A program made the position numbers and the translations under genes. DNA of 64,000 bases from sequence record NC_048046.1; one strand, 5' to 3'. Of this stretch, positions 2,854 through 55,374 are shown one piece after another. The notes below the pieces were generated by a model. That model searched no databases and had not been told where the DNA came from. It was given only the letters and a program-made list of their open reading frames with translations. Numbering within the stretch: position 1 is the stretch's first letter; every line of letters begins with the position of its first letter.

Positions 2854-2939
2854 ACGGGAATTCCAGAGCGGTCAAATGGGCTGGTCTCCAAAACCAGCGG
2901 CGCAAGCCTTCGGGGGTTCGAATCCCTCTTCCCGTGCCA
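2854..2939 (+). tRNA. tRNA-Trp(CCA) with a long variable arm
   Basis: Acceptor acgggaa/ttcccgt, G73-CCA, anticodon arm ctggt-ctCCAaa-accag, T-loop ttcgaat. Confidence 0.85.
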
Positions 2940-2949
2940 CTTCGAATAC

Positions 2950-3026
2950 GCGTCTATAGTATATTGGTCTGATTACCCTTCGTTGCCAACGAAGAGAGGC
3001 GGGTTCGATTCCCGCTAGACGCTCCA
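2950..3026 (+). tRNA. tRNA-Gly(GCC)
   Basis: gcgtcta/tagacgc, cttcg-ttGCCaa-cgaag, U73-CCA. Confidence 0.9.
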
Positions 3027-3030
3027 ATTC

Positions 3031-3104
3031 GCGTCCGTAGCTCAATGGTAGAGCAATGGGCTTCCACCCCGTGGTCGTGGGTTCGATCCCCACCGGACGC
3101 TCCA
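3031..3104 (+). tRNA. tRNA-Gly(TCC)
   Basis: gcgtccg/cggacgc, atggg-ctTCCac-cccgt, U73-CCA. Confidence 0.9.
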
Positions 3105-4535: not shown

Positions 4536-4614
4536 GGGGCCTTCGTCTAAACTGGACTAAGGATAGCCGGCTTTCACCCGGCAGATGCGGGTTCGAACCC
4601 CGTAGGCCCTTCCA
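4536..4614 (+). tRNA. tRNA-Glu(TTC)
   Basis: ggggcct/aggccct, gccgg-ctTTCac-ccggc, encoded CCA. Confidence 0.9.
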
Positions 4615-4629
4615 AGCCATCCTCACTCA

Positions 4630-4704
4630 GGTGCGTTCGTATATCGGCTAATACACCGGACTGTCGATCCGGGAAGACGGGTTCGACTCCCGTACGCACC
4701 GCCA
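4630..4704 (+). tRNA. tRNA-Asp(GTC)
   Basis: ggtgcgt/acgcacc, ccgga-ctGTCga-tccgg, G73-CCA. Confidence 0.92.
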
Positions 4705-7033: not shown

Positions 7034-7110
7034 CTGCGTATAGCTCAGTCTGGTGGAGTGCCCGTTTCGGTAACGGGAGGCCGTGGGTTCAAATCCTACT
7101 ACGCAGACCA
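7034..7110 (+). tRNA. tRNA-Pro(CGG)
   Basis: ctgcgta/tacgcag, cccgt-ttCGGta-acggg, A73-CCA. Confidence 0.9.
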
Positions 7111-7118
7111 ACTTCAGT

Positions 7119-7193
7119 CAGAGTCTGGCCGAGCGGCTAGGCACCGGTTTTGGGAGCCGGACGAGGCAGGTTCAACTCCTGCGGCTCTGACCA
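7119..7193 (+). tRNA. tRNA-Pro(TGG)
   Basis: cagagtc/ggctctg, ccggt-ttTGGga-gccgg. Confidence 0.9.
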
Positions 7194-7194
7194 T

Positions 7195-7271
7195 CAGTGT
7201 GTGGCGCAGTTTGGTAGCGCGCTTGCTCGGGATGCAAGAGGTCGCAGGTTCAAATCCTGCTACACTGACCA
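7195..7271 (+). tRNA. tRNA-Pro(GGG)
   Basis: cagtgtg/tacactg, cttgc-tcGGGat-gcaag (C33). Confidence 0.88.
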
Positions 7272-7277
7272 GTTTAA

Positions 7278-7350
7278 GCTGTCGCGTGTGGATTCACGCC
7301 GGCCCCTTGGTATGGGGAAGTAGAAGGTTCAATTCCTTCCGGCAGCACCA
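7278..7350 (+). tRNA. tRNA-Thr(GGT), atypical compact D-arm
   Basis: gctgtcg/cggcagc, cccc-ttGGTat-gggg, T-arm gaagg-ttcaatt-ccttc, CCA. Confidence 0.75.
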
Positions 7351-7355
7351 AGTTC

Positions 7356-7425
7356 GCCGATGCTTCAGGGAAGAAGTGTCTTTCGTAGTGACGCCAGGAG
7401 GGTTCGAGTCCTTCCATCGGCACCA
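7356..7425 (+). tRNA. tRNA-Thr(CGT), atypical compact D-arm
   Basis: gccgatg/catcggc, loop ttCGTag, T-arm gaggg-ttcgagt-ccttc, CCA; 70 nt. Confidence 0.7.
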
Positions 7426-7465
7426 GTTTAATTCTTGATCCGAGGAGATCAGATGTAGACAAAAT

Positions 7466-7546
7466 GGATCGTGAGCTTAATTCCGGGTGGCCGGGACCGT
7501 CCTCTTAAGTCGAGAGCAAGTGGTTCGACTCCACCACGATCCTCCA
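7466..7546 (+). tRNA. Atypical or degenerate tRNA-Lys(CTT)-like
   Basis: ggatcgt/acgatcc acceptor, T-loop ttcgact, CCA; ctCTTaa loop, but anticodon and D stems pair poorly. Confidence 0.5.
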
Positions 7547-7552
7547 AAACAT

Positions 7553-7642
7553 GGGTGAGTTCTCCGAGCGGTCGAAGGGGAGTGACTCTTAATCACTTGG
7601 ACGAAAGTCCCACCGTGGGTTCGAATCCCACCTCACCCTCCA
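7553..7642 (+). tRNA. tRNA-Lys(CTT) with a long variable arm
   Basis: gggtgag/ctcaccc, agtga-ctCTTaa-tcact, variable hairpin ggac-gaaa-gtcc, CCA. Confidence 0.85.
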
Positions 7643-7650
7643 AGTTTTAT

Positions 7651-7738
7651 CCCTGCGTGGCGAAGTATGGTAGACGCGCCAGTTTCAGATACTGGTGTCC
7701 GAAAGGGCGGGTAGGTTCGACTCCTATCGCAGGGACCA
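7651..7738 (+). tRNA. tRNA-Leu(CAG)
   Basis: Class II cloverleaf, ccagt-ttCAGat-actgg, A73-CCA. Confidence 0.92.
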
Positions 7739-7748
7739 AATTCCAGAT

Positions 7749-7835
7749 GCCCATCTGGTCGGAATGGTAGACGCAGCGCACTCAAAATGCGTGGGCCGAA
7801 AGGCCGTCCCGGTTCAAGTCCGGGGGTGGGCACCA
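7749..7835 (+). tRNA. tRNA-Leu(CAA)
   Basis: Class II cloverleaf, cgca-ctCAAaa-tgcg. Confidence 0.9.
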
Positions 7836-7843
7836 AAGTTAAT

Positions 7844-7931
7844 CGCAGCGTGGCGAAGTCAGGTAGACGCGCCATCTTGAGAGGGTGGTGTCCGAAAGGG
7901 CGGGTAGGTTCGAATCCTATCGCTGCGACCA
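7844..7931 (+). tRNA. tRNA-Leu(GAG)
   Basis: Class II cloverleaf, ccatc-ttGAGag-ggtgg. Confidence 0.92.
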
Positions 7932-7939
7932 AGTTCTGA

Positions 7940-8014
7940 TCTGGTGTAGTCGAGTGGTTAAGACGCTGCATTGTGGATGCGGAGGCTCTGGTTCAATCCC
8001 AGGCACCAGTACCA
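7940..8014 (+). tRNA. tRNA-His(GTG), A73 and no encoded G-1
   Basis: ctgca-ttGTGga-tgcgg, acceptor ctggtg/caccag, ACCA end. Confidence 0.85.
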
Positions 8015-8018
8015 ATAC

Positions 8019-8093
8019 GGGGATGTAGCTCAGGGGTAGAGCGGCTGTTTTGCAAGCAGCGGGTCGGGGGTTCGAATCCCTCCATCTCCACCA
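8019..8093 (+). tRNA. tRNA-Ala(TGC)
   Basis: G3.U70 pair, gctgt-ttTGCaa-gcagc. Confidence 0.92.
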
Positions 8094-8098
8094 ACTAC

Positions 8099-8169
8099 GG
8101 GGCCAGCGCTGGGCGCAGCCATCCTTTGCAAGGAAGGCGGGCGGGGTTCGATTCCCCGTGACTCCACCA
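8099..8169 (+). tRNA. Atypical tRNA-Ala(TGC), minimal D-arm and extended anticodon stem
   Basis: ggggcca/tgactcc with G3.U70; gcgc-tgg-gcgc D hairpin; gccatcc-ttTGCaa-ggaaggc. Confidence 0.7.
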
Positions 8170-8170
8170 C

Positions 8171-8259
8171 GGATGGTGAATTGATCAGGCGATCAGGGCG
8201 GTTTCGAAAACCGAGCGGACCTTCACGGGTCTGGGGTTCAAGTCCTCCGCCATCCGCCA
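8171..8259 (+). tRNA. tRNA-Ser(CGA), 8/4 fold
   Basis: 8-bp acceptor ggatggtg/cgccatcc, 4-bp T-stem gggg/cctc, ttCGAaa loop, long variable arm, G73. Confidence 0.85.
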
Positions 8260-8263
8260 ACAT

Positions 8264-8353
8264 GGAGAGCGAACCGGACAGCCGCGCCGGGACCGATTGG
8301 AAATCGCGTCGGACCTTCACGGGTCTGGGGATGGTGTCCTCCGCTCTCCGCCA
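8264..8353 (+). tRNA. tRNA-Ser(GGA), 8/4 fold, non-canonical T-loop
   Basis: ggagagcg/cgctctcc, cga-ttGGAaa-tcg, T-loop atggtgt. Confidence 0.8.
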
Positions 8354-8357
8354 ACAT

Positions 8358-8445
8358 GGATGTATGGCTGAGAGGCTGAAAGCGCCCGTCTTGAAAACGG
8401 GTCGACCGAGAGGTCGCGGGAGTTCGAATCTCTCTGCATCCACCA
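8358..8445 (+). tRNA. tRNA-Ser(TGA)
   Basis: Canonical 7/5 class II, cccgt-ctTGAaa-acggg, A73. Confidence 0.88.
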
Positions 8446-14053: not shown

Positions 14054-14128
14054 CCCTACGTAGCTGAGACAGAGTAGCGCCAGAGTGAAATCCTGGAGAC
14101 GGAGGTGCGAGCACTCTCGTGGGGGCCA
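14054..14128 (+). tRNA. tRNA-Phe(GAA), atypical T-loop
   Basis: ccctacg/cgtgggg, loop gtGAAat, T-loop tgcgagc. Confidence 0.7.
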
Positions 14129-14136
14129 TTTTCAGT

Positions 14137-14211
14137 GGCAGGTTAGTTCAGAGGTAGAACGCCGCTATGACATGGCGGATGTCGGGGGTTCAATTCCCTC
14201 ACCTGCTACCA
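14137..14211 (+). tRNA. tRNA-Val(GAC)
   Basis: ggcaggt/acctgct, ccgct-atGACat-ggcgg. Confidence 0.88.
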
Positions 14212-14212
14212 T

Positions 14213-14288
14213 CCTAGTGTAGCTCAGTTGGTAGAGCAGCGGATCGATAATCCGCCGGTCGCCGGTTCAAGTCCGGCCGCTAGGTCCA
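14213..14288 (+). tRNA. tRNA-Ile(GAT)
   Basis: cctagtg/cgctagg, gcgga-tcGATaa-tccgc (C33, U73). Confidence 0.85.
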
Positions 14289-14296
14289 GTTTCTGA

Positions 14297-14372
14297 TGGG
14301 GCATAGCTCAGGGGTTAGAGCGCGCGCTTGATAAGCGTGAGGCCGTTGGTTCGAGACCAACTGTCCCTACCA
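14297..14372 (+). tRNA. tRNA-Ile(GAT)
   Basis: cgcgc-ttGATaa-gcgtg, canonical D and T arms. Confidence 0.88.
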
Positions 14373-14405
14373 ACAAAGGCCGGCGCGGAGATGCGCGCCG
14401 CCTAA

Positions 14406-14481
14406 CGCGAACGGGCCAGATGGGAAGGCTGGGGTGTCACATACCTCGATTGACTGTGTTCGATTCACAGGTTCGCGACCA
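14406..14481 (+). tRNA. tRNA-Val(CAC)
   Basis: cgcgaac/gttcgcg, ggggt-gtCACat-acctc, T-arm ctgtg-ttcgatt-cacag. Confidence 0.8.
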
Positions 14482-14488
14482 TGTTTAT

Positions 14489-14562
14489 TGGGGGATCGTC
14501 TAATGGTAGGACGGTAGAGTCTGGTTCTACAGATATAGGTTCGAGTCCTATTCCCCCATCCA
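14489..14562 (+). tRNA. tRNA-Gln(CTG)
   Basis: U1-A72, gtaga-gtCTGgt-tctac. Confidence 0.88.
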
Positions 14563-14568
14563 AGTTGT

Positions 14569-14642
14569 TCTCGGGTGGTCTAATGGTAGGACATCTGGTT
14601 TTGGTCCAGAGGGTTGGGGTTCGATTCCTTGGCCGAGAGCCA
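14569..14642 (+). tRNA. tRNA-Gln(TTG)
   Basis: U1-A72, tctgg-ttTTGgt-ccaga, G73. Confidence 0.88.
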
Positions 14643-14652
14643 ACTTATTTAT

Positions 14653-14741
14653 TCTCATGTGGCGGAACTGGTAAACGCACCGGACTGTTAATCCGGCGTC
14701 TCGCAAGAGACTTGGGGGTTCGAAGCCCTCCGTGAGAGCCA
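14653..14741 (+). tRNA. tRNA-Asn(GTT) with a long variable arm
   Basis: tctcatg/cgtgaga, ccgga-ctGTTaa-tccgg, variable hairpin gtctc-gcaa-gagac, G73. Confidence 0.88.
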
Positions 14742-14770
14742 ATTTGTCGCAGCCCCGGCTGCGGCGTTAT

Positions 14771-14854
14771 GCCCTGGTAACCCGGCGCGCACTACGAATG
14801 CGCGAGCCGTAGCTGGAGTTGAAAAGGCTGGTTCGAATCCAGCCCAGGGCGCCA
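14771..14854 (+). tRNA. D-armless tRNA-Arg(ACG)-like
   Basis: gccctgg/ccagggc, 8-nt connector, cgcgca-ctACGaa-tgcgcg, 22-nt variable region, canonical T-arm, GCCA. Confidence 0.7.
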
Positions 14855-14859
14855 CCTTT

Positions 14860-14937
14860 AGCGATGTAGCTCAGTGGATTTAGAGCGTTCCCCTACGAAG
14901 GGAAGGGTCGGGGGTTCGAGTCCCTCCATCGCTGCCA
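14860..14937 (+). tRNA. tRNA-Arg(ACG)
   Basis: agcgatg/catcgct, ttccc-ctACGaa-gggaa. Confidence 0.92.
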
Positions 14938-14942
14938 ACCTT

Positions 14943-15025
14943 AGCGTACAGGCCGAGCAGGATTATCGTCAGGCGCCGCCCTCCGAAGGCGGAGAGGCTC
15001 GGTTCGAGTCCGAGGTACGCTGCCA
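14943..15025 (+). tRNA. tRNA-Arg(CCG), enlarged D-loop
   Basis: agcgtac/gtacgct, ccgcc-ctCCGaa-ggcgg. Confidence 0.85.
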
Positions 15026-48988: not shown

Positions 48989-49238
48989 GCCGGGCTATCA
49001 CGTCGCTGAAATCCCCAAGGGCGTCCTGGGCGAACCGTCCAAGATCGCCGAAGAACACGCCGAGTTCCAGGACGCGGTCTCTCAGGGCATCAAGATCATG
49101 GCCCTGGTCGAACTGGCGGACCTCTACGGCGCCATCAAGAAGTACCTCGAAAAGCACCATCCCGGCGTCACCTTCGACGACCTGGACGCCATGAGCTTCG
49201 TCACCGAAAGGGCATTCATCAATGGCCGCCGCGCTTAA
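48975..49238 (+). CDS. Small protein, possibly MazG-like NTP pyrophosphohydrolase
   Basis: KIAEEHAEF...ELADL acidic pattern. Confidence 0.5.
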   Translation: MLDSKPGYHVAEIPKGVLGEPSKIAEEHAEFQDAVSQGIKIMALVELADLYGAIKKYLEKHHPGVTFDDLDAMSFVTERAFINGRRA

Positions 49239-50076
49239 TTGGCGGGATTTCCCCGTCGCCGACTGTGAGTTCAGTGTCAAAGCGCTGAACGCGATCTGGA
49301 ACGATCACGGACCGAACGCCACCCTGGGCATGCTCGCCTCCAAGACCGATGAGGAACTGGTGCGCTCAGCCCACATCGGACGCAAAACGCTGAAGGAAAT
49401 CCGATCCATGATCGACTACATCTCGCAGCAACACCCCGATCCGGCACCGCAACGTCCGATCTTCATCCCGCACGCGACTATCGACTGGTCGTTGCTGGCG
49501 CGCGCCGTGGACTTCTATCAGGCCCAGGGCTTCAAGTACGTCGAGATGCCCTGGGCGGTCAGCCGCGAGAGTGTCGCGATCACCTGTCCGAAGCCGGAGT
49601 TCACCGCTGAGGTCGACGGTCTGGGCAGCCTCGTGGGGTCGGCCGAGCAGTCGTTCCTGCACATGGACCTCGCCGGCAAGTTGGGTAAGGGGCGCTTCTG
49701 CGCCCTGACGCCGTGCTTCCGGCTGGGCGACTACGAGGACGATCTGCATCACCCCTACTTCATGAAGGTCGAACTCTACGCCAATAACGCCGAGGGCATT
49801 TCGGTGATGATGGGGGACGAGGAGGTGGCTCCGCCCGAAGCGCGTGCTATGATGTCGCTCCTCCACATGATGAGCATCGTCGGCCAGTTCAATCGTTCGG
49901 AGTTGACTGCCGAGGAACTCGCGAATGTCCATGGCGTCCAGACGGCCGAAGGCTACGACATCGAACTGAACGGTATCGAGATCGGCAGCTACGGCGTCCG
50001 CCAGCATGGCGACCACACCTGGGTCTACGGCACCGGTGTCGCCGAGCCGCGCTTCTCGCAAGCCCGCCGCGCCTAG
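49222..50076 (+). CDS. RNAP alphaCTD-like domain fused to a class II aminoacyl-tRNA synthetase-like catalytic domain
   Basis: N-terminal FSVKALN...SKTDEELVRSAHIGRKTLKEI; C-terminal GFKYVEMP (motif 1), CFR..HHPYFMKVE (motif 2), GTGVAEPR (motif 3). Confidence 0.72.
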   Translation: MAAALNWRDFPVADCEFSVKALNAIWNDHGPNATLGMLASKTDEELVRSAHIGRKTLKEIRSMIDYISQQHPDPAPQRPIFIPHATIDWSLLARAVDFYQAQGFKYVEMPWAVSRESVAITCPKPEFTAEVDGLGSLVGSAEQSFLHMDLAGKLGKGRFCALTPCFRLGDYEDDLHHPYFMKVELYANNAEGISVMMGDEEVAPPEARAMMSLLHMMSIVGQFNRSELTAEELANVHGVQTAEGYDIELNGIEIGSYGVRQHGDHTWVYGTGVAEPRFSQARRA

Positions 50077-51988: not shown

Positions 51989-52133
51989 GAAGACTGAAGG
52001 TTATCGAGAAATCGACACCGGTTGGATCGGCGATGGCGGCTCGGCCGGTATCGGCGATGGAGGTACGGGCTGCATCGGTGACGGCGGCACCAAGATTTAG
52101 TCCCCGGTCTGAGTCGACTCCTCGACGGAAATC

Positions 52134-52162
52134 TTGACAGATCGCCGTTCGTTCATCATAAT
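52134..52162 (+). promoter_or_regulatory. Sigma70-type promoter
   Basis: TTGACA-N17-CATAAT. Confidence 0.75.
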
Positions 52163-52175
52163 GCGCGTCTCTTGA

Positions 52176-52209
52176 AAAGCTCGCCTCTAATCGGGGCGGG
52201 CTTTCTTTT
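52176..52209 (+). terminator. Terminator-like hairpin
   Basis: aaagctcgcctc-taatc-ggggcgggcttt followed by ctttt. Confidence 0.7.
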
Positions 52210-52217
52210 GCCTTAGA

Positions 52218-52533
52218 TGGCATGGCCCCGTGGAAGCGGGCCAAAGCGGTAGGCGCGGCCTGGGAAACCTCGCACGCACCACACGCTGTCCCGGCTGGAA
52301 AGCCGGCTTATAGCAGGAGGGTCGCCCAGCGCCTCTCCACCCCTGGGACGTTACAGCTACGGCTCTGGCGTCGTCATTGTGAGGTGAGAACTCCTTCCTC
52401 ACACACGCTGGGACGCCGGCGTAAAGTACGAGGGCAAAAGGGACGTCCATGTTGGCGTCCACCCGTCGGAAGAGATGCGGGAGATCGGTCGACTTGTCGG
52501 CCGACTGAAAACCGAGGACCCCGCCACAATGAC
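52218..52533 (+). ncRNA. Candidate structured ncRNA of unknown family
   Basis: No credible ORF; many hairpins with purine-rich loops; two crossing long-range helices. Confidence 0.5.
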
Positions 52534-52534
52534 A

Positions 52535-52569
52535 AAGGCCCGCCGGAGTGATCCGGCGGGCCTTCCTTT
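52535..52569. terminator. Bidirectional terminator downstream of the TROVE gene
   Basis: aaggcccgccgga-gtga-tccggcgggcctt, T-runs on both strands. Confidence 0.85.
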
Positions 52570-52589: not shown

Positions 52590-53999
52590 TTAGTCGCGGA
52601 CACCCTCCGGCAGAAGCGCCTCGCCGATGACGCCGGCCGCTTCGGCTTCATGGATGAAGCGCAGGACCGATTCCGAGAAGCCGTCGATGTGCGTCCACTT
52701 GCCGTAGCCCACGCCGTTCTTGTTCGAAGCGACGTTGATCACGTACGAGTGCTTTGCCTTCGGCGCCGGCATGCTGCCGCCGCCCAGCATGTGGTTGACG
52801 CTCGCGCCCGAGGCTTGCTCATCGGTGATGATGATCAGGCGATCGAACTCGAACTTCGCCTGGACAGTGGCGACGGCTTGAACGAGCGCCGTGCCACCGT
52901 AAGGCTGCGAGCGAGCGATCGCTTCGACGCCGGCCATGCCCTTGCGAGCCGGCACTTCCACCACCGAGTTCGAGAAGCTGATCACGCGCAGGTCTTCGGC
53001 CGGGATGACCGAAGCCAGGGCGCAGGCAGCATCACGACGCGTCAGATCGGACTTGGCCGACAGGCGGTCCCGCATCGAACCCGACACGTCCACCATGACC
53101 ACGGTGCGGCCCGGCAGCTTCGGCATGTCGGCGATCGACGCGATCAGCGCTTCATCCAGGGCCGGTTCGAACGACGGTGCCGCACGAGCCGCCGCGATGT
53201 AGCGGAACGGCAGGACGCGGTGCGCGCCGCCCTTGCGGGCCTTAATCGCATCGATCACCAGCTTGCGGTCGACGCCGGCCTGTTCCATGTTGCGCAGGTT
53301 GCGCAGCAGGGCGAGGTAGCCGAGCTTCTTGTCTTCCAGCAGACGGGTGAACTCCGCCTTCTTGTCACCGCCGGCCGACAGCGCGACTTCCCAGGTGTCC
53401 GGCGACTCCAGCGTCTGTTCGACCAGACCCTTGTACAGGGTTTGACGTTCGTCGTTGGCGGCCTTCGGGTGGCTCAGGAACAGCACGTCACGCAGACGCA
53501 CCTCCTTGGCGCGGTCGTACTTGGCGATCTGGTACGCGTCGAACTTCGCGAACGCCTTGGCGAGGCCCAGCTTCATTTGCTTGGACAGCGGAGCCTTGCG
53601 GGCGCCGTCGCGCGGCGGGTTGTACTTCCAGTACAGCGCCACCAGTTCCGACAGTTCGTCGGCGCGCTGGATCACGCGGGCGATCGTCTCGGAGACGAGG
53701 CCGTTGCCCGAGCCGCGCTTGGCCAGGGTGACGAGCAGCAGCAGCGGCACGTGACGCAGGTTGGCGACTTCACGGGCTTCGATGGCGATCTGAGCCAGGG
53801 TGTCGACCGGGACCTGCTCGGCCAGCTTGGCGATGCGGGTGCTGATCTCGACGCCGTCCTCGTAGGCCTCGTTCTCGAACAGGAGGCAGGACATCACCGA
53901 CCGGCGCAGCGCCTGGACGGTCGTCATGCGGGCAGCGGTCGCGCCCTCGTGCGTCTTTTCGGTGAAGGTGTTCTTGGTCGAACGGTTGGTCGATGCCAT
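52590..53999 (-). CDS. rsr: Ro60/TROVE-domain RNA-binding protein with a C-terminal vWA domain
   Basis: THEGA, LRRSVMSCLLFE, DTWEV, LGYLALLRNLRNM, LPFRY, vWA MIDAS DVSGSM and ITDEQ. Confidence 0.92.
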   Translation of the reverse strand: MASTNRSTKNTFTEKTHEGATAARMTTVQALRRSVMSCLLFENEAYEDGVEISTRIAKLAEQVPVDTLAQIAIEAREVANLRHVPLLLLVTLAKRGSGNGLVSETIARVIQRADELSELVALYWKYNPPRDGARKAPLSKQMKLGLAKAFAKFDAYQIAKYDRAKEVRLRDVLFLSHPKAANDERQTLYKGLVEQTLESPDTWEVALSAGGDKKAEFTRLLEDKKLGYLALLRNLRNMEQAGVDRKLVIDAIKARKGGAHRVLPFRYIAAARAAPSFEPALDEALIASIADMPKLPGRTVVMVDVSGSMRDRLSAKSDLTRRDAACALASVIPAEDLRVISFSNSVVEVPARKGMAGVEAIARSQPYGGTALVQAVATVQAKFEFDRLIIITDEQASGASVNHMLGGGSMPAPKAKHSYVINVASNKNGVGYGKWTHIDGFSESVLRFIHEAEAAGVIGEALLPEGVRD

Positions 54000-54038
54000 G
54001 GTCGGGTCGGCTCCTCTACTGCGTCAAAGGTTGACCGC

Positions 54039-54172
54039 AAGGTTGAGGGGGAACAAGTCGTCCACGGGGTGCGTCTACCAATTCCGCCATCCCTTTCCGA
54101 AGATCGGGAGCAGGGCTCGAACCTGCATTTCGCTTTACCGAAGTATCCGTGTACTACGCCACCCTCAACCTT
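54039..54172 (-). ncRNA. Y-RNA-like unit 1 (permuted tRNA module, T-arm before D-arm)
   Basis: Terminal stem aaggttgaggg/ccctcaacctt; UGGCGUAG core; T-arm gcagg-ttcgagc-cctgc, then D-arm tggcggaattggtagacgc. Confidence 0.85.
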
Positions 54173-54187
54173 ACGGCTGATGACTTG

Positions 54188-54349
54188 GAGAGGTTGAGGG
54201 GGAACTGGCGAGCACGGTTTCTTATTCCGGTGCGTTTGGCCACTCCGCCACATGATCCTGTTGGGGATCAAGGTGGGACTCGAACCCACGTGCCCTTTCG
54301 GACGCCGGTTCCACGAAGTATCCGCACTCTGCGCCACCCTCAACCTCTC
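54188..54349 (-). ncRNA. Y-RNA-like unit 2 (permuted class II tRNA module)
   Basis: 13-bp terminal stem; Leu-type variable arm gtccgaaagggc, T-arm, acceptor closed by ccaaca, D-arm. Confidence 0.88.
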
Positions 54350-54362
54350 GGTCGTTGGTGTC

Positions 54363-54506
54363 GAGGTAGAGGGGGAACAGTCGGCAACGCGTTTTTAGCG
54401 CTCTACCACTGAGCTACCTTGGGCTTTTGGCCCTCGGGTTGGACTCGAACCAACGACCTCTCGATTAACAGTCGAAGAACTCGTCGCCTACGCCACCCTC
54501 TACCTC
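54363..54506 (-). ncRNA. Y-RNA-like unit 3 (permuted tRNA retaining an Asn GTT anticodon hairpin)
   Basis: gaggtagaggg/ccctctacctc stem; tcga-ctGTTaa-tcga, T-arm, acceptor, D-arm tagctcagtggtagagc. Confidence 0.88.
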
Positions 54507-54508
54507 AA

Positions 54509-54648
54509 TCGGCGTGTAGGTTGACACATGGGGAACTGGCGCCGTCGGTTTAGGGGGATCGAACCCCGTGGCGCGGATTTGCGGCCGCACCATTTCAACC
54601 AGCGAAGTAGCCGAAAGCTACGCCACCATGTGTCAGCCTACACGCCGA
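54509..54648 (-). ncRNA. Y-RNA-like unit 4 (non-permuted, D-armless, Cys-like module)
   Basis: About 22-bp terminal stem; gcgg-ccGCAaat-ccgc, then T-arm gggg-ttcgatc-cccc. Confidence 0.8.
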
Positions 54649-54661
54649 CACCCCGATCATT

Positions 54662-54832
54662 AGGCGGTGGGGGAACAAGCGATCCCACAACCTTAGGCGC
54701 TCTAACCGCTGAGCTACACGCCCATCATCAATTCAGGCCGGAGCCTGGACTGGTGGTGGACGCGGCTGGATTCGAACCAGCGACCTCCCGCTCCTAATGC
54801 GAAGTAAGTGACATCTACGCCACCCACCGCCT
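54662..54832 (-). ncRNA. Y-RNA-like unit 5 (permuted tRNA with an internal ACCA)
   Basis: aggcggtggg/cccaccgcct stem; T-arm gctgg-ttcgaat-ccagc, cgcgtcc-ACCA, linker hairpin, gggcgtg plus D-arm. Confidence 0.88.
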
Positions 54833-54842
54833 CGTGATCGGT

Positions 54843-55018
54843 GTCGAGTGCGTTTTGGAGGGCTCAGGGGAATGAACGAGAAGGCACTTTGGATGCCGGT
54901 TGTTCTACCGCTGAACTACACCCGAGTTGCCCCGGATGGTGGGATTCGAACCCACGACCCACTGGTTGGAGAAGAAATCCTCCTCTACGCCACCTGAGCC
55001 TTCCAAAACGCACTCGAC
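54843..55018 (-). ncRNA. Y-RNA-like unit 6 (permuted tRNA module)
   Basis: 26-bp terminal stem; T-arm gtggg-ttcgaat-cccac, acceptor catccgg/tcgggtg, D-arm tagttcagcggtagaac. Confidence 0.88.
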
Positions 55019-55047
55019 CTGCCTTTGACGACAGACCAACCCGATCA

Positions 55048-55144
55048 GCGGTGGGGGAACGAGCGCCCCCAGGGAGACTAGACCTTTCAGTCCGGTCGCT
55101 TGGTTATGGTAAGCGAAGTACCCGAGGACTACGCCACCCACCGC
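55048..55144 (-). ncRNA. Y-RNA-like unit 7 (no tRNA module)
   Basis: gcggtggg/cccaccgc stem; same UGGCGUAG-N8-UACUUCG and GUUCC core; two small apical hairpins. Confidence 0.8.
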
Positions 55145-55154
55145 AAATCTGGTC

Positions 55155-55233
55155 GTCCGGGAATTGTCGAGGTCGGAAATGGGCCGAAGCCCGCTCTATG
55201 CAAAAGAAGTAACCGATCTCTGTCGCCACGGAC
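55155..55233 (-). ncRNA. Y-RNA-like unit 8 (short, divergent)
   Basis: gtccg/cggac stem; UGGCGACAG-N8-UACUUC; AUUCC 3' strand; inner helix still pairs. Confidence 0.6.
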
Positions 55234-55239
55234 AGTGAC

Positions 55240-55278
55240 CTTGTCACATAGGGCGATTCCGATGTCAACAATGCTGGC
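55240..55278 (-). promoter_or_regulatory. Promoter of the Y-array/rsr unit
   Basis: Minus strand GCCAGcattgTTGACA...ctatgt directly upstream of unit 8. Confidence 0.6.
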
Positions 55279-55374
55279 AAACTTTTTTCGAGAAATGTGT
55301 GCCTGACTGTCAGACATGAAAAAGCCCCGCAACGTCCGGACGTCACGGGGCTTCCCCAGGTAGGTGATGGCGAC

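What the first reader, a model, noticed from the sequence alone, without database searches (positions are those of the whole stretch)
52590..55278. Phage Ro60 gene preceded by a tandem array of eight Y-RNA-like units
Seen: the 1.2 kb upstream of the TROVE gene has no credible ORF. On the same (minus) strand it holds eight consecutive self-closing units. Each has its own terminal stem (5-26 bp), then a shared core: 5' UGGCG(U/C)AG-N8-U(A/U)CUUC and 3' G-N3-(G/A)UUCC (unit 1 has one extra base; unit 8 reads UGGCGACAG). The N8 segment differs in every unit but always pairs with the 3' strand, e.g. gagtgcgg/ccgtgctc, ggcgacg/cgttgcc, gatgtcac/gtgggatc, gaggagg/ccttctc, gtcctcggg/cctgggggc. This is compensatory covariation across paralogs. 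A promoter sits 5' of unit 8 and I see no terminator before the rsr RBS. Established: bacterial Ro60 (Rsr) binds Y RNAs encoded next to it, and YrlA-type Y RNAs mimic tRNA; usually one or two are reported per locus. Inference: this is an amplified, diversified Y-RNA repertoire co-transcribed with its Ro60, possibly acting as tRNA decoys or RNA-decay tethers. I cannot check whether an array this large has been described.
Basis: partly seen in the sequence, partly recalled or inferred. Interest (0 to 1): 0.95.

Follow-up and report, generated by a model that had tools for sequence, protein, structure and literature searches.

The report
Eight Y RNA genes before phage Ro60
Caulobacter phage CcrPW carries, just upstream of its Ro60 gene, eight different small-RNA genes of the Y RNA type, five of them with a tRNA-like body; this is the largest such set found among about 125 related loci and belongs to a widespread family that current RNA databases miss.

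Summary
The window is Caulobacter phage CcrPW. On the minus strand, between a terminator with a conserved TTGACA box and the Ro60 (TROVE+vWA) gene, lie eight self-closing units. They share 5' U-GGCG(U/C/AC)AG-N8-U(A/U)CUUC and 3' CG-N3-4-(G/A)UUCC.

Both enclosing helices covary strongly, among the eight paralogs and across 77 relatives. A covariance model built from relatives finds exactly these eight sites in the 64 kb, and nothing else.

The units are divergent YrlA/YrlB-type Y RNAs. Five hold a circularly permuted tRNA-like body (T arm, closed acceptor stem, D arm). Two of those also have an anticodon-like stem-loop. One unit has only a T arm, and two are plain hairpins. Rfam's YrlA model scores them below threshold.

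Arrays are normal in this Ro60 clade: 1-8 units in phages of Caulobacter, Brevundimonas and Xanthomonas and in viral contigs, and 1-7 in bacterial genomes. Eight is the maximum seen. Units are collinear orthologs across phage genera, so the array is old, not a recent amplification.

Ro60 binding, co-transcription and processing are inferred. Function (exonuclease tether or tRNA decoy) is untested. Verdict: a new variant of a known kind.

The parts
55318..55357 (-). Intrinsic terminator of the upstream HTH gene. It marks the 5' boundary of the Y RNA-Ro60 transcription unit.
   Evidence: G+C-rich hairpin followed by a T run. It is picked up as a hairpin match. The equivalent site is annotated as a terminator in CcrColossus and is conserved in position in five phages.
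55263..55268 (-). Candidate -35 box TTGACA of the array promoter.
   Evidence: TGTTGACA is invariant in CcrPW, CcrColossus and three Brevundimonas phages while its flanks vary. It lies 34-35 nt before the unit 8 stem. No E. coli-type -10 box was found. Function is inferred.
55154..55234 (-). Unit 8: short Y RNA (81 nt). Core reads UGGCGACAG. The body is a GGGC-UUCG-GCCC hairpin with no tRNA parts.
   Evidence: R2 57.8 bits, E 4.6e-15. Ortholog is first in the Brevundimonas arrays at 70-74% identity.
55048..55144 (-). Unit 7: Y RNA (97 nt) with two small hairpins and no tRNA parts.
   Evidence: z -2.5. R2 61.7 bits, E 3e-16.
54843..55018 (-). Unit 6: YrlA-like Y RNA. The core unit is 54861-55000, and the closing stem is 8+17 bp. 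It has a T arm, an acceptor-like stem of 7-8 bp capped by GCAA, and a D arm.
   Evidence: Rfam YrlA 33.4 bits, E 4.6e-5. Fold (z -3.4). R2 41.3 bits, E 4e-10; not in the training set. Compensatory CU/AG to UC/GA change in the closing stem against CcrColossus.
54662..54832 (-). Unit 5: YrlA-like Y RNA (171 nt) with all four tRNA arms. The anticodon-like arm is UUCGC-AUUAGGA-GCGGG. After the T arm, the acceptor 3' strand is followed by an encoded A-CCA-CCA and a spacer hairpin. Then come the acceptor 5' strand GGGCGUG (G3:U70) and the D arm.
   Evidence: Rfam YrlA 30.5 bits and beta-tmRNA 26.5 bits, E 5e-6. Once rotated in silico, ARAGORN draws a full 77-nt cloverleaf. ACCACCA is conserved in CcrColossus. 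R2 53.8 bits; not in the training set.
54510..54647 (-). Unit 4: Y RNA. The core unit is 54522-54635, and the closing stem is 10+11 bp. It has a 7-bp hairpin and a T arm only, with no D arm and no acceptor stem.
   Evidence: z -3.3. R2 65.1 bits, E 3e-17.
54361..54508 (-). Unit 3: YrlA-like Y RNA (148 nt) with an anticodon-like arm UUCGA-CUGUUAA-UCGAG, AGGUC, a T arm, an imperfect closed acceptor stem and a D arm.
   Evidence: Rfam YrlA 29.9 bits and tRNA 25 bits on its 5' half. The rotated form is drawn by ARAGORN as a cloverleaf with loop triplet GUU. An RNAalifold consensus of 18 orthologs recovers all helices. R2 50.3 bits; not in the training set.
54188..54349 (-). Unit 2: YrlA-like Y RNA (162 nt) with a class-II-like long variable arm (GUCC-GAAA-GGGC), a T arm, a closed acceptor-like stem, and a D arm read by eye as class-II type (GGCGGAGUGGCCAAACGC).
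   Evidence: R2 54.4 bits. Ortholog is last in the Marchewka array at 70% identity.
54034..54177 (-). Unit 1: YrlA-like Y RNA (144 nt) with a 16-bp closing stem, a small hairpin, a T arm, an acceptor-like hairpin capped by UUCG, and a tRNA-Leu-type D arm (GGCGGAAUUGGUAGACGC). Its 3' core has one extra base.
   Evidence: z -3.5. The D arm aligns closely to the phage's own tRNA-Leu(CAA) D arm. R2 58.0 bits.
54011..54016 (-). Ribosome-binding site GAGGAG of the Ro60 gene, starting 18 nt after unit 1.
   Evidence: Read from the sequence.
52590..53999 (-). Ro60 homologue (469 aa; TROVE ring plus vWA domain).
   Evidence: Pfam TROVE 1.3e-18 and vWA_Ro60 2.7e-6. Closest solved structure is Thermus phage phiLo Ro60, 9KOP/9L5Y, E 6e-21 over residues 14-451. 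Annotated 'RNA-binding protein' in the CcrPW record.
52530..52562 (-). Intrinsic terminator after the Ro60 gene: 11-bp perfect stem GGCCCGCCGGA / UCCGGCGGGCC, loop UCAC, tail UUUGUCAUU.
   Evidence: Read from the sequence. The equivalent site is annotated as a terminator in CcrColossus. It was not listed by the simple scan.

Best explanation
This is an operon of eight distinct Y RNA genes followed by the gene for their protein partner, a phage Ro60.

Shown here:
- There are eight self-closing RNA units with a shared two-strand core, enclosed by two helices that covary.
- The core is a close variant of the published bacterial Ro60-recognition motif.
- Five units have the permuted tRNA-like body that defines YrlA.
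- Such arrays are conserved and collinear upstream of Ro60 in many phages and bacteria.

Inferred:
1. Transcription starts a few bases before unit 8, from a promoter with a conserved TTGACA box. It reads through all units and the Ro60 gene to the terminator at about 52530.
2. Host RNases cut the precursor into individual RNAs of 80-175 nt. RNase P may also nick the acceptor-like loop of units with a 7-bp stem, above all unit 5, which encodes ACCA.
3. Each RNA binds the outer face of the Ro60 ring through the conserved module: terminal stem, then U-GG:CC, then the internal loop CGUA / G-N3-GUU, then the 8-9 bp inner stem.
4. The variable bodies (tRNA mimics of class I and class II type, a T-arm-only body, plain hairpins) act as adaptors. 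They tether Ro60 to different partners or gate its cavity. One protein thereby gives up to eight different ribonucleoproteins during infection.

The most likely partners are host 3'-5' exoribonucleases such as PNPase, as in the known Ro60-Y RNA-PNPase machine, and proteins that recognise tRNA.
For: Identity of the window and gene:
- The window is phage CcrPW, with a Ro60 gene.

The units are real and specific:
- The motif is specific to the array.
- Covariation holds among the paralogs.
- Across 77 units from 33 loci, 85.9% of cells pair against 60.9% shuffled. The covariation score is 0.668 against 0.205, 0 of 500 shuffles reach it, and slid controls are at most 0.16.
- The CM finds exactly eight hits in 64 kb.

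Conservation with Ro60:
- 137 hits in 42 phage loci and 274 hits in 80 bacterial loci. All are on the Ro60 strand and upstream of the gene.
- Units are collinear orthologs across phage genera.

Link to known Y RNAs:
- Sub-threshold YrlA hits.
- An unfitted RNAalifold consensus of 18 long units recovers the terminal stem, inner stem, anticodon-like arm, T arm, closed acceptor stem and D arm. 25 of 34 pairs show compensatory change.
- A more distant Rhizobium phage unit carries the classical GCGAAAG motif together with UUACUUC.

Transcription unit:
- Conserved -35 box and flanking terminators.

Precedents:
- Y RNAs lie upstream of rsr and are processed from one precursor in M. smegmatis and D. 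radiodurans. M. smegmatis YrlA is cut by RNase P and receives CCA (PMC4201824).
- Phage phiLo Ro60 binds two upstream Y-like RNAs and forms complexes with host PNPase in vitro (PMC12135203).
Against: - There are no expression, processing or binding data for this phage.
- Rfam YrlA scores (30-33 bits) are far below its gathering score of 69, here and in 20 related loci.
- The core differs from GNCGAA at one position (U or C for A).
- The E. coli-type promoter scan found nothing.
- Two weak terminator-like hairpins lie inside the array, at 55039-55014 and 54897-54883. The second is annotated as a terminator in CcrColossus, so read-through to Ro60 may be partial.
- The protein is far from the curated bacterial Rsr model (28 bits against a cut-off of 900).
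- The role of the tRNA-like domain is unknown even for the well-studied YrlA.
Confidence: 0.82

Rival explanations
1. Same RNAs, different job: the tRNA-like bodies are decoys or sensors in the conflict over tRNA. They imitate several tRNA classes, including anticodon loops. They either soak up host tRNA-cleaving defence nucleases or, once cut, report the attack to Ro60 and to RNA repair or decay enzymes.
For: - u3 and u5 have 5-bp/7-nt arms placed exactly where an anticodon arm sits, with Y/A32-U33-NNN-R37.
- In 19 such arms from relatives the stems are conserved, U33 is kept in 18 of 19 and R37 in 19 of 19. The middle triplet shows 14 different values.
- In 12 closely related Acidobacteriota orthologs the three triplet columns carry 1.55-1.73 bits of entropy against a mean of 0.46, while U33 is invariant.
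- Orthologs of u3 read GUU, UGU and GCU.
- D arms of both class I and class II types are present.
- The phage also carries 25-26 tRNA genes and a histidyl-tRNA synthetase gene.
- The bacterial rsr-yrlBA-rtcBA operon is induced by damaged tRNA (abstract of PMC7790460).
Against: - Triplet variability could simply reflect absence of constraint.
- Only 2 of the 8 units here have the anticodon-like arm, and 3 units have no tRNA body.
- No tRNA-targeting defence is known to act on this phage.
- Nothing was tested experimentally.
Confidence: 0.22
2. Some units are genes for usable split or permuted tRNAs. After RNase P cleavage and 3' trimming, unit 5 would expose an acceptor stem with G3:U70, A73 and CCA. 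It could then be charged (alanine identity) and act in translation or in tmRNA-like ribosome rescue.
For: - The rotated u5 gives a perfect cloverleaf with encoded ACCA, conserved in CcrColossus.
- There are sub-threshold tmRNA hits.
- N7-N-CCA follows the T stem in 6 of 83 units, against about 1.3 expected.
- M. smegmatis YrlA is cut by RNase P and gets CCA in vivo.
Against: - The two halves would stay joined to a bulky Ro60-binding stem inserted between positions 26 and 27. That is hard to fit on a ribosome.
- The Brevundimonas ortholog has a closed 8-bp acceptor hairpin without CCA.
- Other units have imperfect or capped acceptor stems.
- ARAGORN finds no tmRNA and no tag reading frame.
Confidence: 0.05
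3. The array is decayed tRNA-gene debris, a cis-acting leader of the Ro60 mRNA, or a cluster of small mobile inverted-repeat elements. In this reading it has no role as separate RNAs.
For: - The units contain tRNA pieces, and annotators have called tRNAs inside them: tRNA-Gln in CcrColossus, tRNA-Ser in Gurke, tRNA-Thr in 10KY502B.
- Each unit has terminal inverted repeats.
Against: - The non-tRNA core is the most conserved part.
- The helices covary instead of decaying.
- Units are kept in order, and on the Ro60 strand, in more than 120 loci from distant hosts.
- The terminal repeats differ between units, unlike copies of a mobile element.
- None occurs elsewhere in the 64 kb.
Confidence: 0.03

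Closest known systems
YrlA (Rfam RF02553), the tRNA-like bacterial Y RNA of Salmonella, Mycobacterium and many other bacteria and some phages (Chen et al. 2014; Wang et al. 2018)
   Same: - Encoded next to Ro60 on the same strand.
- The 5' and 3' ends form a long stem that carries the motif G-N-C-G-A-A-(N)-G or a close variant.
- A UAC/YUAY element follows.
- The body has a T arm, a closed acceptor-like stem and a D arm in permuted order.
- It can be part of a polycistronic precursor.
- CcrColossus is named among phages with Y RNA-like RNAs (PMC12135203, citing the 2014 survey).
   Different: - The core is GG(C/U)G(U/A/C)AG.
- The 3' strand (CG-N3-GUUCC) is conserved too. Only the 5' strand is said to be recognisable in the Salmonella and Mycobacterium RNAs.
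- Some units add a true anticodon-like stem-loop, which the Salmonella YrlA structure lacks.
- Class-II-like variants occur.
- Rfam's model scores at most 33 bits.
- There are eight units per locus, against two per characterised species.
YrlB / Yrn2-type hairpin Y RNAs
   Same: Units 8 and 7 (plain hairpins) and unit 4 (T arm only) resemble the second, non-tRNA-like Y RNA found with YrlA in each studied species. M. smegmatis YrlB also has a possible T arm.
   Different: Here the hairpin units share exactly the same two-strand core as the tRNA-like units. No homology to YrlB or Yrn2 sequences was tested.
Thermus phage phiLo Ro60 with Yrl1 and Yrl2 (PMC12135203)
   Same: It is a phage Ro60, and the closest solved structure to this protein (E 6e-21). 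Y-like RNAs lie upstream. Binding to Ro60 and host PNPase was shown in vitro.
   Different: It has two RNAs, defined by a CGAA motif, against eight here. My model does not detect the reported upstream RNAs. It gives one weak hit downstream of the phiLo gene instead.
Deinococcus radiodurans rsr locus (Yrn1, Yrn2 and small RNAs a, b, d)
   Same: Several small RNAs are encoded upstream of rsr and made from a polycistronic precursor that includes a tRNA. Some have T arms.
   Different: Only two are accepted as Y RNAs. The Ro60-binding helix is of the metazoan type and the arm order differs. There is no uniform repeated core.
Circularly permuted tRNA genes and two-piece (permuted) tmRNA
   Same: The T arm and acceptor 3' strand come before the acceptor 5' strand and D arm. 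Unit 5 even encodes ACCA followed by a spacer.
   Different: An extra Ro60-binding helix sits at the 26/27 junction. No tag reading frame is present. Matches are sub-threshold only.

Membership tests
Y RNA (Ro60-bound noncoding RNA) | Encoded close to, and on the strand of, a Ro60/TROVE gene | tested here: met
   All eight units lie within 1.25 kb upstream of the TROVE+vWA gene on the minus strand. The same holds for 411 hits in 122 related loci.
Y RNA (Ro60-bound noncoding RNA) | Long stem formed by the 5' and 3' ends that contains a conserved Ro60-binding sequence | tested here: met
   Terminal and inner helices covary. An invariant core lies between them.
Y RNA (Ro60-bound noncoding RNA) | Physically bound by Ro60 and stabilised by it | not testable with these tools
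   Needs pull-down or gel-shift experiments.
Y RNA (Ro60-bound noncoding RNA) | Discrete RNA of roughly 80-130 nt | not testable with these tools
   Predicted unit lengths are 81-171 nt. Real ends are unknown.
YrlA (Rfam RF02553) | Score at or above the family's gathering threshold (69 bits) | tested here: not met
   Best scores are 33.4, 30.5 and 29.9 bits for u6, u5 and u3. There are no YrlA hits at threshold in the window or in 20 related loci.
YrlA (Rfam RF02553) | 5' motif GNCGAAN0-1G | tested here: inconclusive
   The units read GGCGUAG (six), GGCGCAG (u2) and GGCGACAG (u8), which is one position off. Relatives read GGUGAAG or GGUGAAAG, and a Rhizobium phage unit reads GCGAAAG.
YrlA (Rfam RF02553) | Permuted tRNA-like domain: T arm, closed acceptor-like stem, then D arm | tested here: met
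   Present in u6, u5, u3, u2 and u1. Absent from u8, u7 and u4.
tRNA gene | Canonical cloverleaf in native order, detected by tRNA finders | tested here: not met
   ARAGORN finds 25 tRNAs in the window, none in the array. Rfam tRNA hits there are below threshold, at 25 and 23 bits. At a lowered ARAGORN threshold there are only two dubious calls.
tmRNA (one- or two-piece) | tRNA-like domain plus a tag-peptide reading frame, above family threshold | tested here: not met
   beta_tmRNA 26.5 bits against 84, and permuted tmRNA 24.2 against 47, on unit 5 only. ARAGORN reports no tmRNA.
Ro60 / Rsr protein | TROVE (HEAT-repeat ring) domain followed by a vWA domain | tested here: met
   Pfam TROVE 67.9 bits and vWA_Ro60 27.8 bits, both above their cut-offs. 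Full-length match to phiLo Ro60 structures.
Ro60 / Rsr protein | NCBIfam equivalog RNA-bind_Rsr (cut-off 900 bits) | tested here: not met
   28.1 bits. This is a separate clade of TROVE+vWA proteins.

The most novel reading that the evidence does not exclude
One Ro60 is served by a panel of complete tRNA look-alikes. Their anticodon-like triplets are kept free to change, or are driven to change, while the rest of the loop and scaffold stays fixed. The array would then be a programmable set of tRNA mimics used in the phage-host contest over tRNA. It could bait or sense anticodon nucleases, or capture tRNA-handling enzymes. The same device would be reused by soil bacteria together with a BCS1-like AAA ATPase.
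Probability: 0.2. Interest if true: 0.85.

Novelty: new variant of a known kind. Interest (0 to 1): 0.62.

Why it matters
Why one Ro60 protein needs several Y RNAs, and what the tRNA-like domain of bacterial Y RNAs does, are open questions.

- **A workable test system.** This locus gives eight different partners for one Ro60, in a phage that grows on the laboratory model Caulobacter crescentus. Deletion, pull-down and processing experiments are straightforward.
- **A sharper definition of the binding module.** The comparative set defines a two-strand consensus for the Ro60-binding module.
- **A model that fills a database gap.** The covariance model finds more than 400 units in about 120 loci where Rfam calls no YrlA at threshold in the 21 loci scanned.
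- **Annotation errors explained.** Several tRNA genes annotated in related phages are the 5' halves of such units.
- **A lead on function.** The anticodon-like loops have a fixed frame and a variable triplet, which hints at a link to tRNA-centred phage-host conflict.

Tried and rejected
- **Rfam at curated thresholds.** Nothing in the array or in 20 related loci. Only the permissive scan linked it to YrlA.
- **E. coli-type promoter scan.** No site. I relied on conservation of TTGACA instead.
- **First model with filters off.** R1 was built from units with the interior cut out. With filters off it truncated long units because of its length limit. With default filters it missed u3 and u6 and hit u5 only partially. 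I rebuilt it from its own full-length hits as R2.
- **Regex-only counting in bacterial loci.** The background was high: 65 matches on the wrong strand against 219. I dropped it in favour of the model.
- **ARAGORN on the native array.** No credible tRNA.
- **Coding hypothesis.** The ORFs are not conserved and have no domains.
- **Descent of the tRNA-like bodies from the phage's own tRNAs.** Only generic tRNA similarity was found, apart from the unit 1 D arm against tRNA-Leu.
- **Longer flanks for two Acidobacteriota loci.** Their arrays do not extend beyond 3 kb.
- **Bacteroides phage crAss001 (37% Ro60 identity).** No hit with R2.
- **Literature.** The supplementary tables of Chen et al. 2014, which would say how many YrlA were listed for CcrColossus, are not held. 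Three reviews are not held either. I therefore cannot exclude that some of these units were listed in 2014.
- **Curation of alignment A1.** I removed 9 motif-anchored candidates by eye before building it. Their 3' anchor had landed on a T loop or a spurious site.

Full report
**What the window is.** The region is 100% identical to Caulobacter phage CcrPW (308 kb, Colossusvirus) and 94% identical to CcrColossus. The gene at 52590-53999(-) encodes a 469-aa protein with a TROVE domain (E 1.3e-18) and a Ro60-type vWA domain. Its closest solved relative is the Ro60 of Thermus phage phiLo (E 6e-21 over nearly the full length). It is far from NCBI's curated bacterial Rsr model (28 bits against 900). 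The surroundings are typical of a jumbo phage: ribonucleotide reductase, dUTPase and an HTH protein upstream, lysis genes and a histidyl-tRNA synthetase downstream, and 25-26 tRNA genes elsewhere in the window. The 1.3 kb between the HTH gene and Ro60 is unannotated in CcrPW, apart from a 42-aa 'hypothetical protein' on the opposite strand. In CcrColossus it carries one 'tRNA-Gln' and one 'terminator'.

**The observation.** Reading the minus strand and locating the motifs gives eight units. Each is closed by its own terminal stem of 6-16 uninterrupted pairs; in units 6 and 4 the stem continues to 25 and 21 pairs after a single mismatch. All share U-GGCG(U/C)AG (UGGCGACAG in unit 8), eight variable bases, and U(A/U)CUUC. 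On the 3' side they share CG-N3-(G/A)UUCC, with N4 in unit 1. The 5' pattern occurs 7 times in 64 kb against 0.01 expected.

I fixed the 3' anchor by motif alone. Cognate strands then pair much better than non-cognate ones, for both the terminal and the inner helix, and none of 20000 permutations did as well. A direct count on the eight paralogs gives 90.8% paired cells against 65.5% when shuffled. Fourteen of 19 pairs change on both sides, and the covariation score is 0.699 against 0.191, with slid controls at most 0.156. Folding energies beat shuffles for five of six units tested (z -2.5 to -4.5); unit 8 is weak at -1.4. The ORFs in the region have no domain hits and are not conserved in CcrColossus.

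**Relatives.** Ro60 homologues are preceded by the same kind of noncoding stretch in several groups: Brevundimonas jumbo phages (about 70% protein identity), 44-kb Xanthomonas/Xylella phages (57%), 33 further viral metagenome contigs (41-60%) and 80 bacterial genome contigs. The bacterial contigs include Asticcacaulis at 61%, Hyphomonadaceae, a Mesorhizobium MAG and many Acidobacteriota at about 50%.

I anchored units by motif only and obtained 90 distinct units from 33 loci, with the same cognate-pairing signal. I aligned 77 of them with the interior excised, after dropping nine mis-anchored candidates by eye. On that alignment 85.9% of cells pair (60.9% shuffled). Sixteen of 21 pairs show double changes, in 464 cells against 175 when shuffled. 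The covariation score is 0.668 against 0.205, and slid controls are at most 0.16. The consensus is:

terminal stem - U - GG(C/U)G(U/A/C)(A)AG - 8-bp stem - UACUUC ... stem - CG-N3-(G/A)UUCC - terminal stem.

**A covariance model.** I rebuilt it from its own 75 full-length hits as R2. R2 finds exactly the eight units in the whole window on both strands (41-65 bits, E 4e-10 to 3e-17) and nothing else up to E=1. Units 3, 5 and 6 were not in its training set.

Over 42 phage loci R2 gives 137 hits, and over 80 bacterial loci 274 hits. Every hit is on the Ro60 strand and upstream of the gene. Counts per locus are:
- 8 in CcrPW and CcrColossus
- 6 in phages Gurke and Kikimora
- 5 in four other Brevundimonas phages
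- 4 in the Xanthomonas phages (5 by motif)
- 1-5 in viral contigs
- 1-7 in bacteria, with one locus at seven and seven loci at six among the first 40

Ten-kb flanks for two Acidobacteriota loci show that their arrays are bounded, at 5 and 4 units. Eight is therefore the largest number seen, but arrays are the rule in this clade.

**Age of the array.** Paralogs within CcrPW are only 39-71% identical. Each is 87-99% identical to its CcrColossus counterpart. The best matches in Brevundimonas and Xanthomonas phages (61-76%) follow the same order. The array is therefore old and maintained, with units gained and lost, and is not a recent tandem amplification. Between the two Caulobacter phages the closing stem of unit 6 shows a compensated double change: GGCUCAGG/CCUGAGCC against GGUCCAGG/CCUGGACC.

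**What the units are.** A permissive Rfam scan of the array gives YrlA as the top family for units 6, 5 and 3 (33.4, 30.5 and 29.9 bits; E 5e-5 to 5e-4). These scores are well below the gathering score of 69. No YrlA hit reaches threshold in the window or in 20 related loci holding about 100 units.

The published features of YrlA are a 5' GNCGAAN0-1G motif thought to contact Ro60, a conserved YUAY, and a T arm, closed acceptor-like stem and D arm in that permuted order (PMC4201824). Here the motif is GGCG(U/C)AG. Relatives have GGUGAAG or GGUGAAAG, and a more distant Rhizobium phage unit has GCGAAAG followed by UUACUUC. UAC follows after eight bases.

Units 6, 5, 3, 2 and 1 have the permuted tRNA-like body. 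Unit 4 has only a T arm plus a 7-bp hairpin. Units 7 and 8 have simple hairpins. This recalls the second, hairpin-type Y RNA (YrlB, Yrn2) that accompanies the tRNA-like one in each studied species. I conclude that these are divergent YrlA/YrlB-type Y RNAs. They fail the formal Rfam membership test and have a slightly different core.

**Respects in which they differ from described YrlA.**
1. The 3' strand of the binding module is conserved as well. Only the 5' strand is said to be recognisable in the Salmonella and Mycobacterium RNAs.
2. Units 3 and 5 carry a 5-bp/7-nt hairpin exactly where a tRNA anticodon arm sits, 5 nt (AGGUC) before the T stem. I rotated the sequence in silico and left out the Ro60 module. 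ARAGORN then draws unit 5 as a complete 77-nt cloverleaf with G3:U70, A73 and an encoded CCA, and unit 3 as a cloverleaf with loop CUGUUAA. The Salmonella YrlA crystal structure lacks an anticodon loop.
3. An unfitted RNAalifold consensus of 18 such units from phages and bacteria recovers all six helices, with compensatory changes in 25 of 34 pairs.
4. The bodies imitate different tRNA classes. Unit 1 has a tRNA-Leu-type D arm that aligns closely to the phage's own tRNA-Leu(CAA). Unit 2 has what I read as a class-II-type D arm and a long variable arm. Units 3, 5 and 6 are class I.
5. Unit 5 encodes ACCACCA after the acceptor 3' strand, then a spacer hairpin, then the 5' strand. This is conserved in CcrColossus but absent from the Brevundimonas ortholog. 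It explains the sub-threshold tmRNA hits. It also makes unit 5 a candidate for RNase P cleavage, as shown for M. smegmatis YrlA.

**The anticodon-like loops.** I examined 19 such arms. The stems are nearly constant (UUCGC/GCGGG or UUCGA/UCGAG). Position 32 is a pyrimidine in 18 of 19, position 33 is U in 18 of 19, and position 37 is a purine in 19 of 19. The middle triplet takes 14 different values. In 12 closely related Acidobacteriota orthologs the three triplet columns have 1.55-1.73 bits of entropy against a mean of 0.46 for all columns, while U33 is invariant. Orthologs of unit 3 read GUU (CcrPW, Tenjo), UGU (10KY502B) and GCU (Gurke). This fits either no constraint on the triplet or selection for change. 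I could not distinguish the two.

**Transcription unit.** The HTH gene ends in a hairpin-plus-T-run terminator (55357-55318). An invariant TGTTGACA follows in all five Caulobacter and Brevundimonas phages, 34-35 nt before the first base of the unit 8 stem, while the flanks diverge. The E. coli-type scan finds no full promoter, as may be expected for an alphaproteobacterial host. Unit 1 ends 35 nt before the ATG, with GAGGAG in between. A perfect 11-bp terminator follows the gene (annotated in CcrColossus). Two weak terminator-like hairpins lie inside the array. Co-transcription and processing are thus likely but inferred. They have precedents in M. smegmatis and D. radiodurans.

**Mechanism.** The best-supported account is that the phage makes one precursor, which host RNases cut into eight Y RNAs. 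Each docks on Ro60 through the common module and presents a different body. The known function of such bodies is to tether Ro60 to another protein. The precedents are PNPase in Deinococcus and Salmonella, and phiLo Ro60-Yrl-PNPase complexes in vitro. They may also gate the Ro60 cavity. The tRNA-decoy or sensor idea is attractive given the anticodon-like loops and the phage's heavy investment in tRNAs, but it has no direct support. The idea that unit 5 becomes a chargeable tRNA or tmRNA-like molecule is unlikely. Reading the units as tRNA debris, an mRNA leader or mobile repeats is contradicted by the covariation and by conservation with Ro60.

**Novelty.** Y RNAs next to bacterial and phage Ro60 genes have been known since 2014. 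A 2025 paper states that the 2014 survey found Y RNA-like RNAs in CcrColossus. That survey reported 355 candidates in 276 genomes and at least two Y RNAs in each species studied experimentally. Three abundant RNAs upstream of an Rsr-like gene were noted in a Listeria phage, and two in phiLo. I found no description of an eight-member array, of arrays as a clade-wide feature, of the two-strand consensus, or of anticodon-like arms with a variable triplet. I rate it a new variant of a known kind.

Noticed in passing
L001:3580-3647 (CcrColossus); L005:3284-3358 (Gurke); L007:2621-2688 (10KY502B); window 54069-54197(+): tRNA genes annotated in related phages (tRNA-Gln, tRNA-Ser, tRNA-Thr) are the 5' halves of Y RNA units: Ro60 core, anticodon-like arm and T arm. 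The 42-aa 'hypothetical protein' gp439 of CcrPW lies inside unit 1 on the opposite strand and is probably spurious.
   Followed up: partly
L077:1445-2746; L086:1556-2700; L127:7617-8912; L128:7958-9166: In Acidobacteriota loci a BCS1-like AAA+ ATPase gene (BCS1_N + AAA) sits between two groups of Y RNA units, all upstream of Ro60 and on the same strand. This suggests a three-part system of Y RNAs, ATPase and a vWA-bearing Ro60. An antisense ORF6N-family gene call also lies between the ATPase and Ro60.
   Followed up: partly
L005:6860-7205 and L003:7476-7733: Brevundimonas phages Gurke and Marchewka carry a circularly permuted tmRNA (Rfam RF04321, 57-58 bits, above threshold) 2-3 kb downstream of the Ro60 gene, among tRNA genes. 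No tmRNA is found in the CcrPW window.
   Followed up: no
window 2854-3104, 4536-4704, 7034-8445, 14054-15025; 49222-50076: There are 25-26 tRNA genes in four clusters. Several have unusual lengths in ARAGORN's calls (a tRNA-Lys of 90 nt and a tRNA-Asn of 89 nt). A histidyl-tRNA synthetase gene lies 2.5 kb from the Ro60 gene.
   Followed up: no
L132:4521-4588 (Thermus phage phiLo): The model gives one weak hit (21 bits, E 2e-4) with GGGUACUUC just downstream of the phiLo Ro60 gene. The published Yrl1 and Yrl2 lie upstream. This may be a third Y-like RNA or a chance match.
   Followed up: no
L131:1743-1879 (Rhizobium phage RHph_TM30); L130 (crAss001): A Rhizobium phage with a 37%-identical Ro60 has one unit with the classical GCGAAAG motif, UUACUUC and a T arm, at the start of a 1.2-kb noncoding stretch. 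crAss001-like Bacteroides phages also encode this Ro60 clade, with about 900 nt of noncoding DNA after the gene, but give no hit with the model.
   Followed up: partly
window 52100-52530: About 430 nt between the Ro60 terminator and the next annotated gene has no annotated feature, no Rfam hit and no hit with the Y RNA model.
   Followed up: no
window 54715-54781(-): The acceptor/T-arm part of unit 5 gives sub-threshold matches to beta-proteobacterial and permuted tmRNA models (26.5 and 24.2 bits). The cause is UCCACCA plus a G3:U70 acceptor stem.
   Followed up: partly
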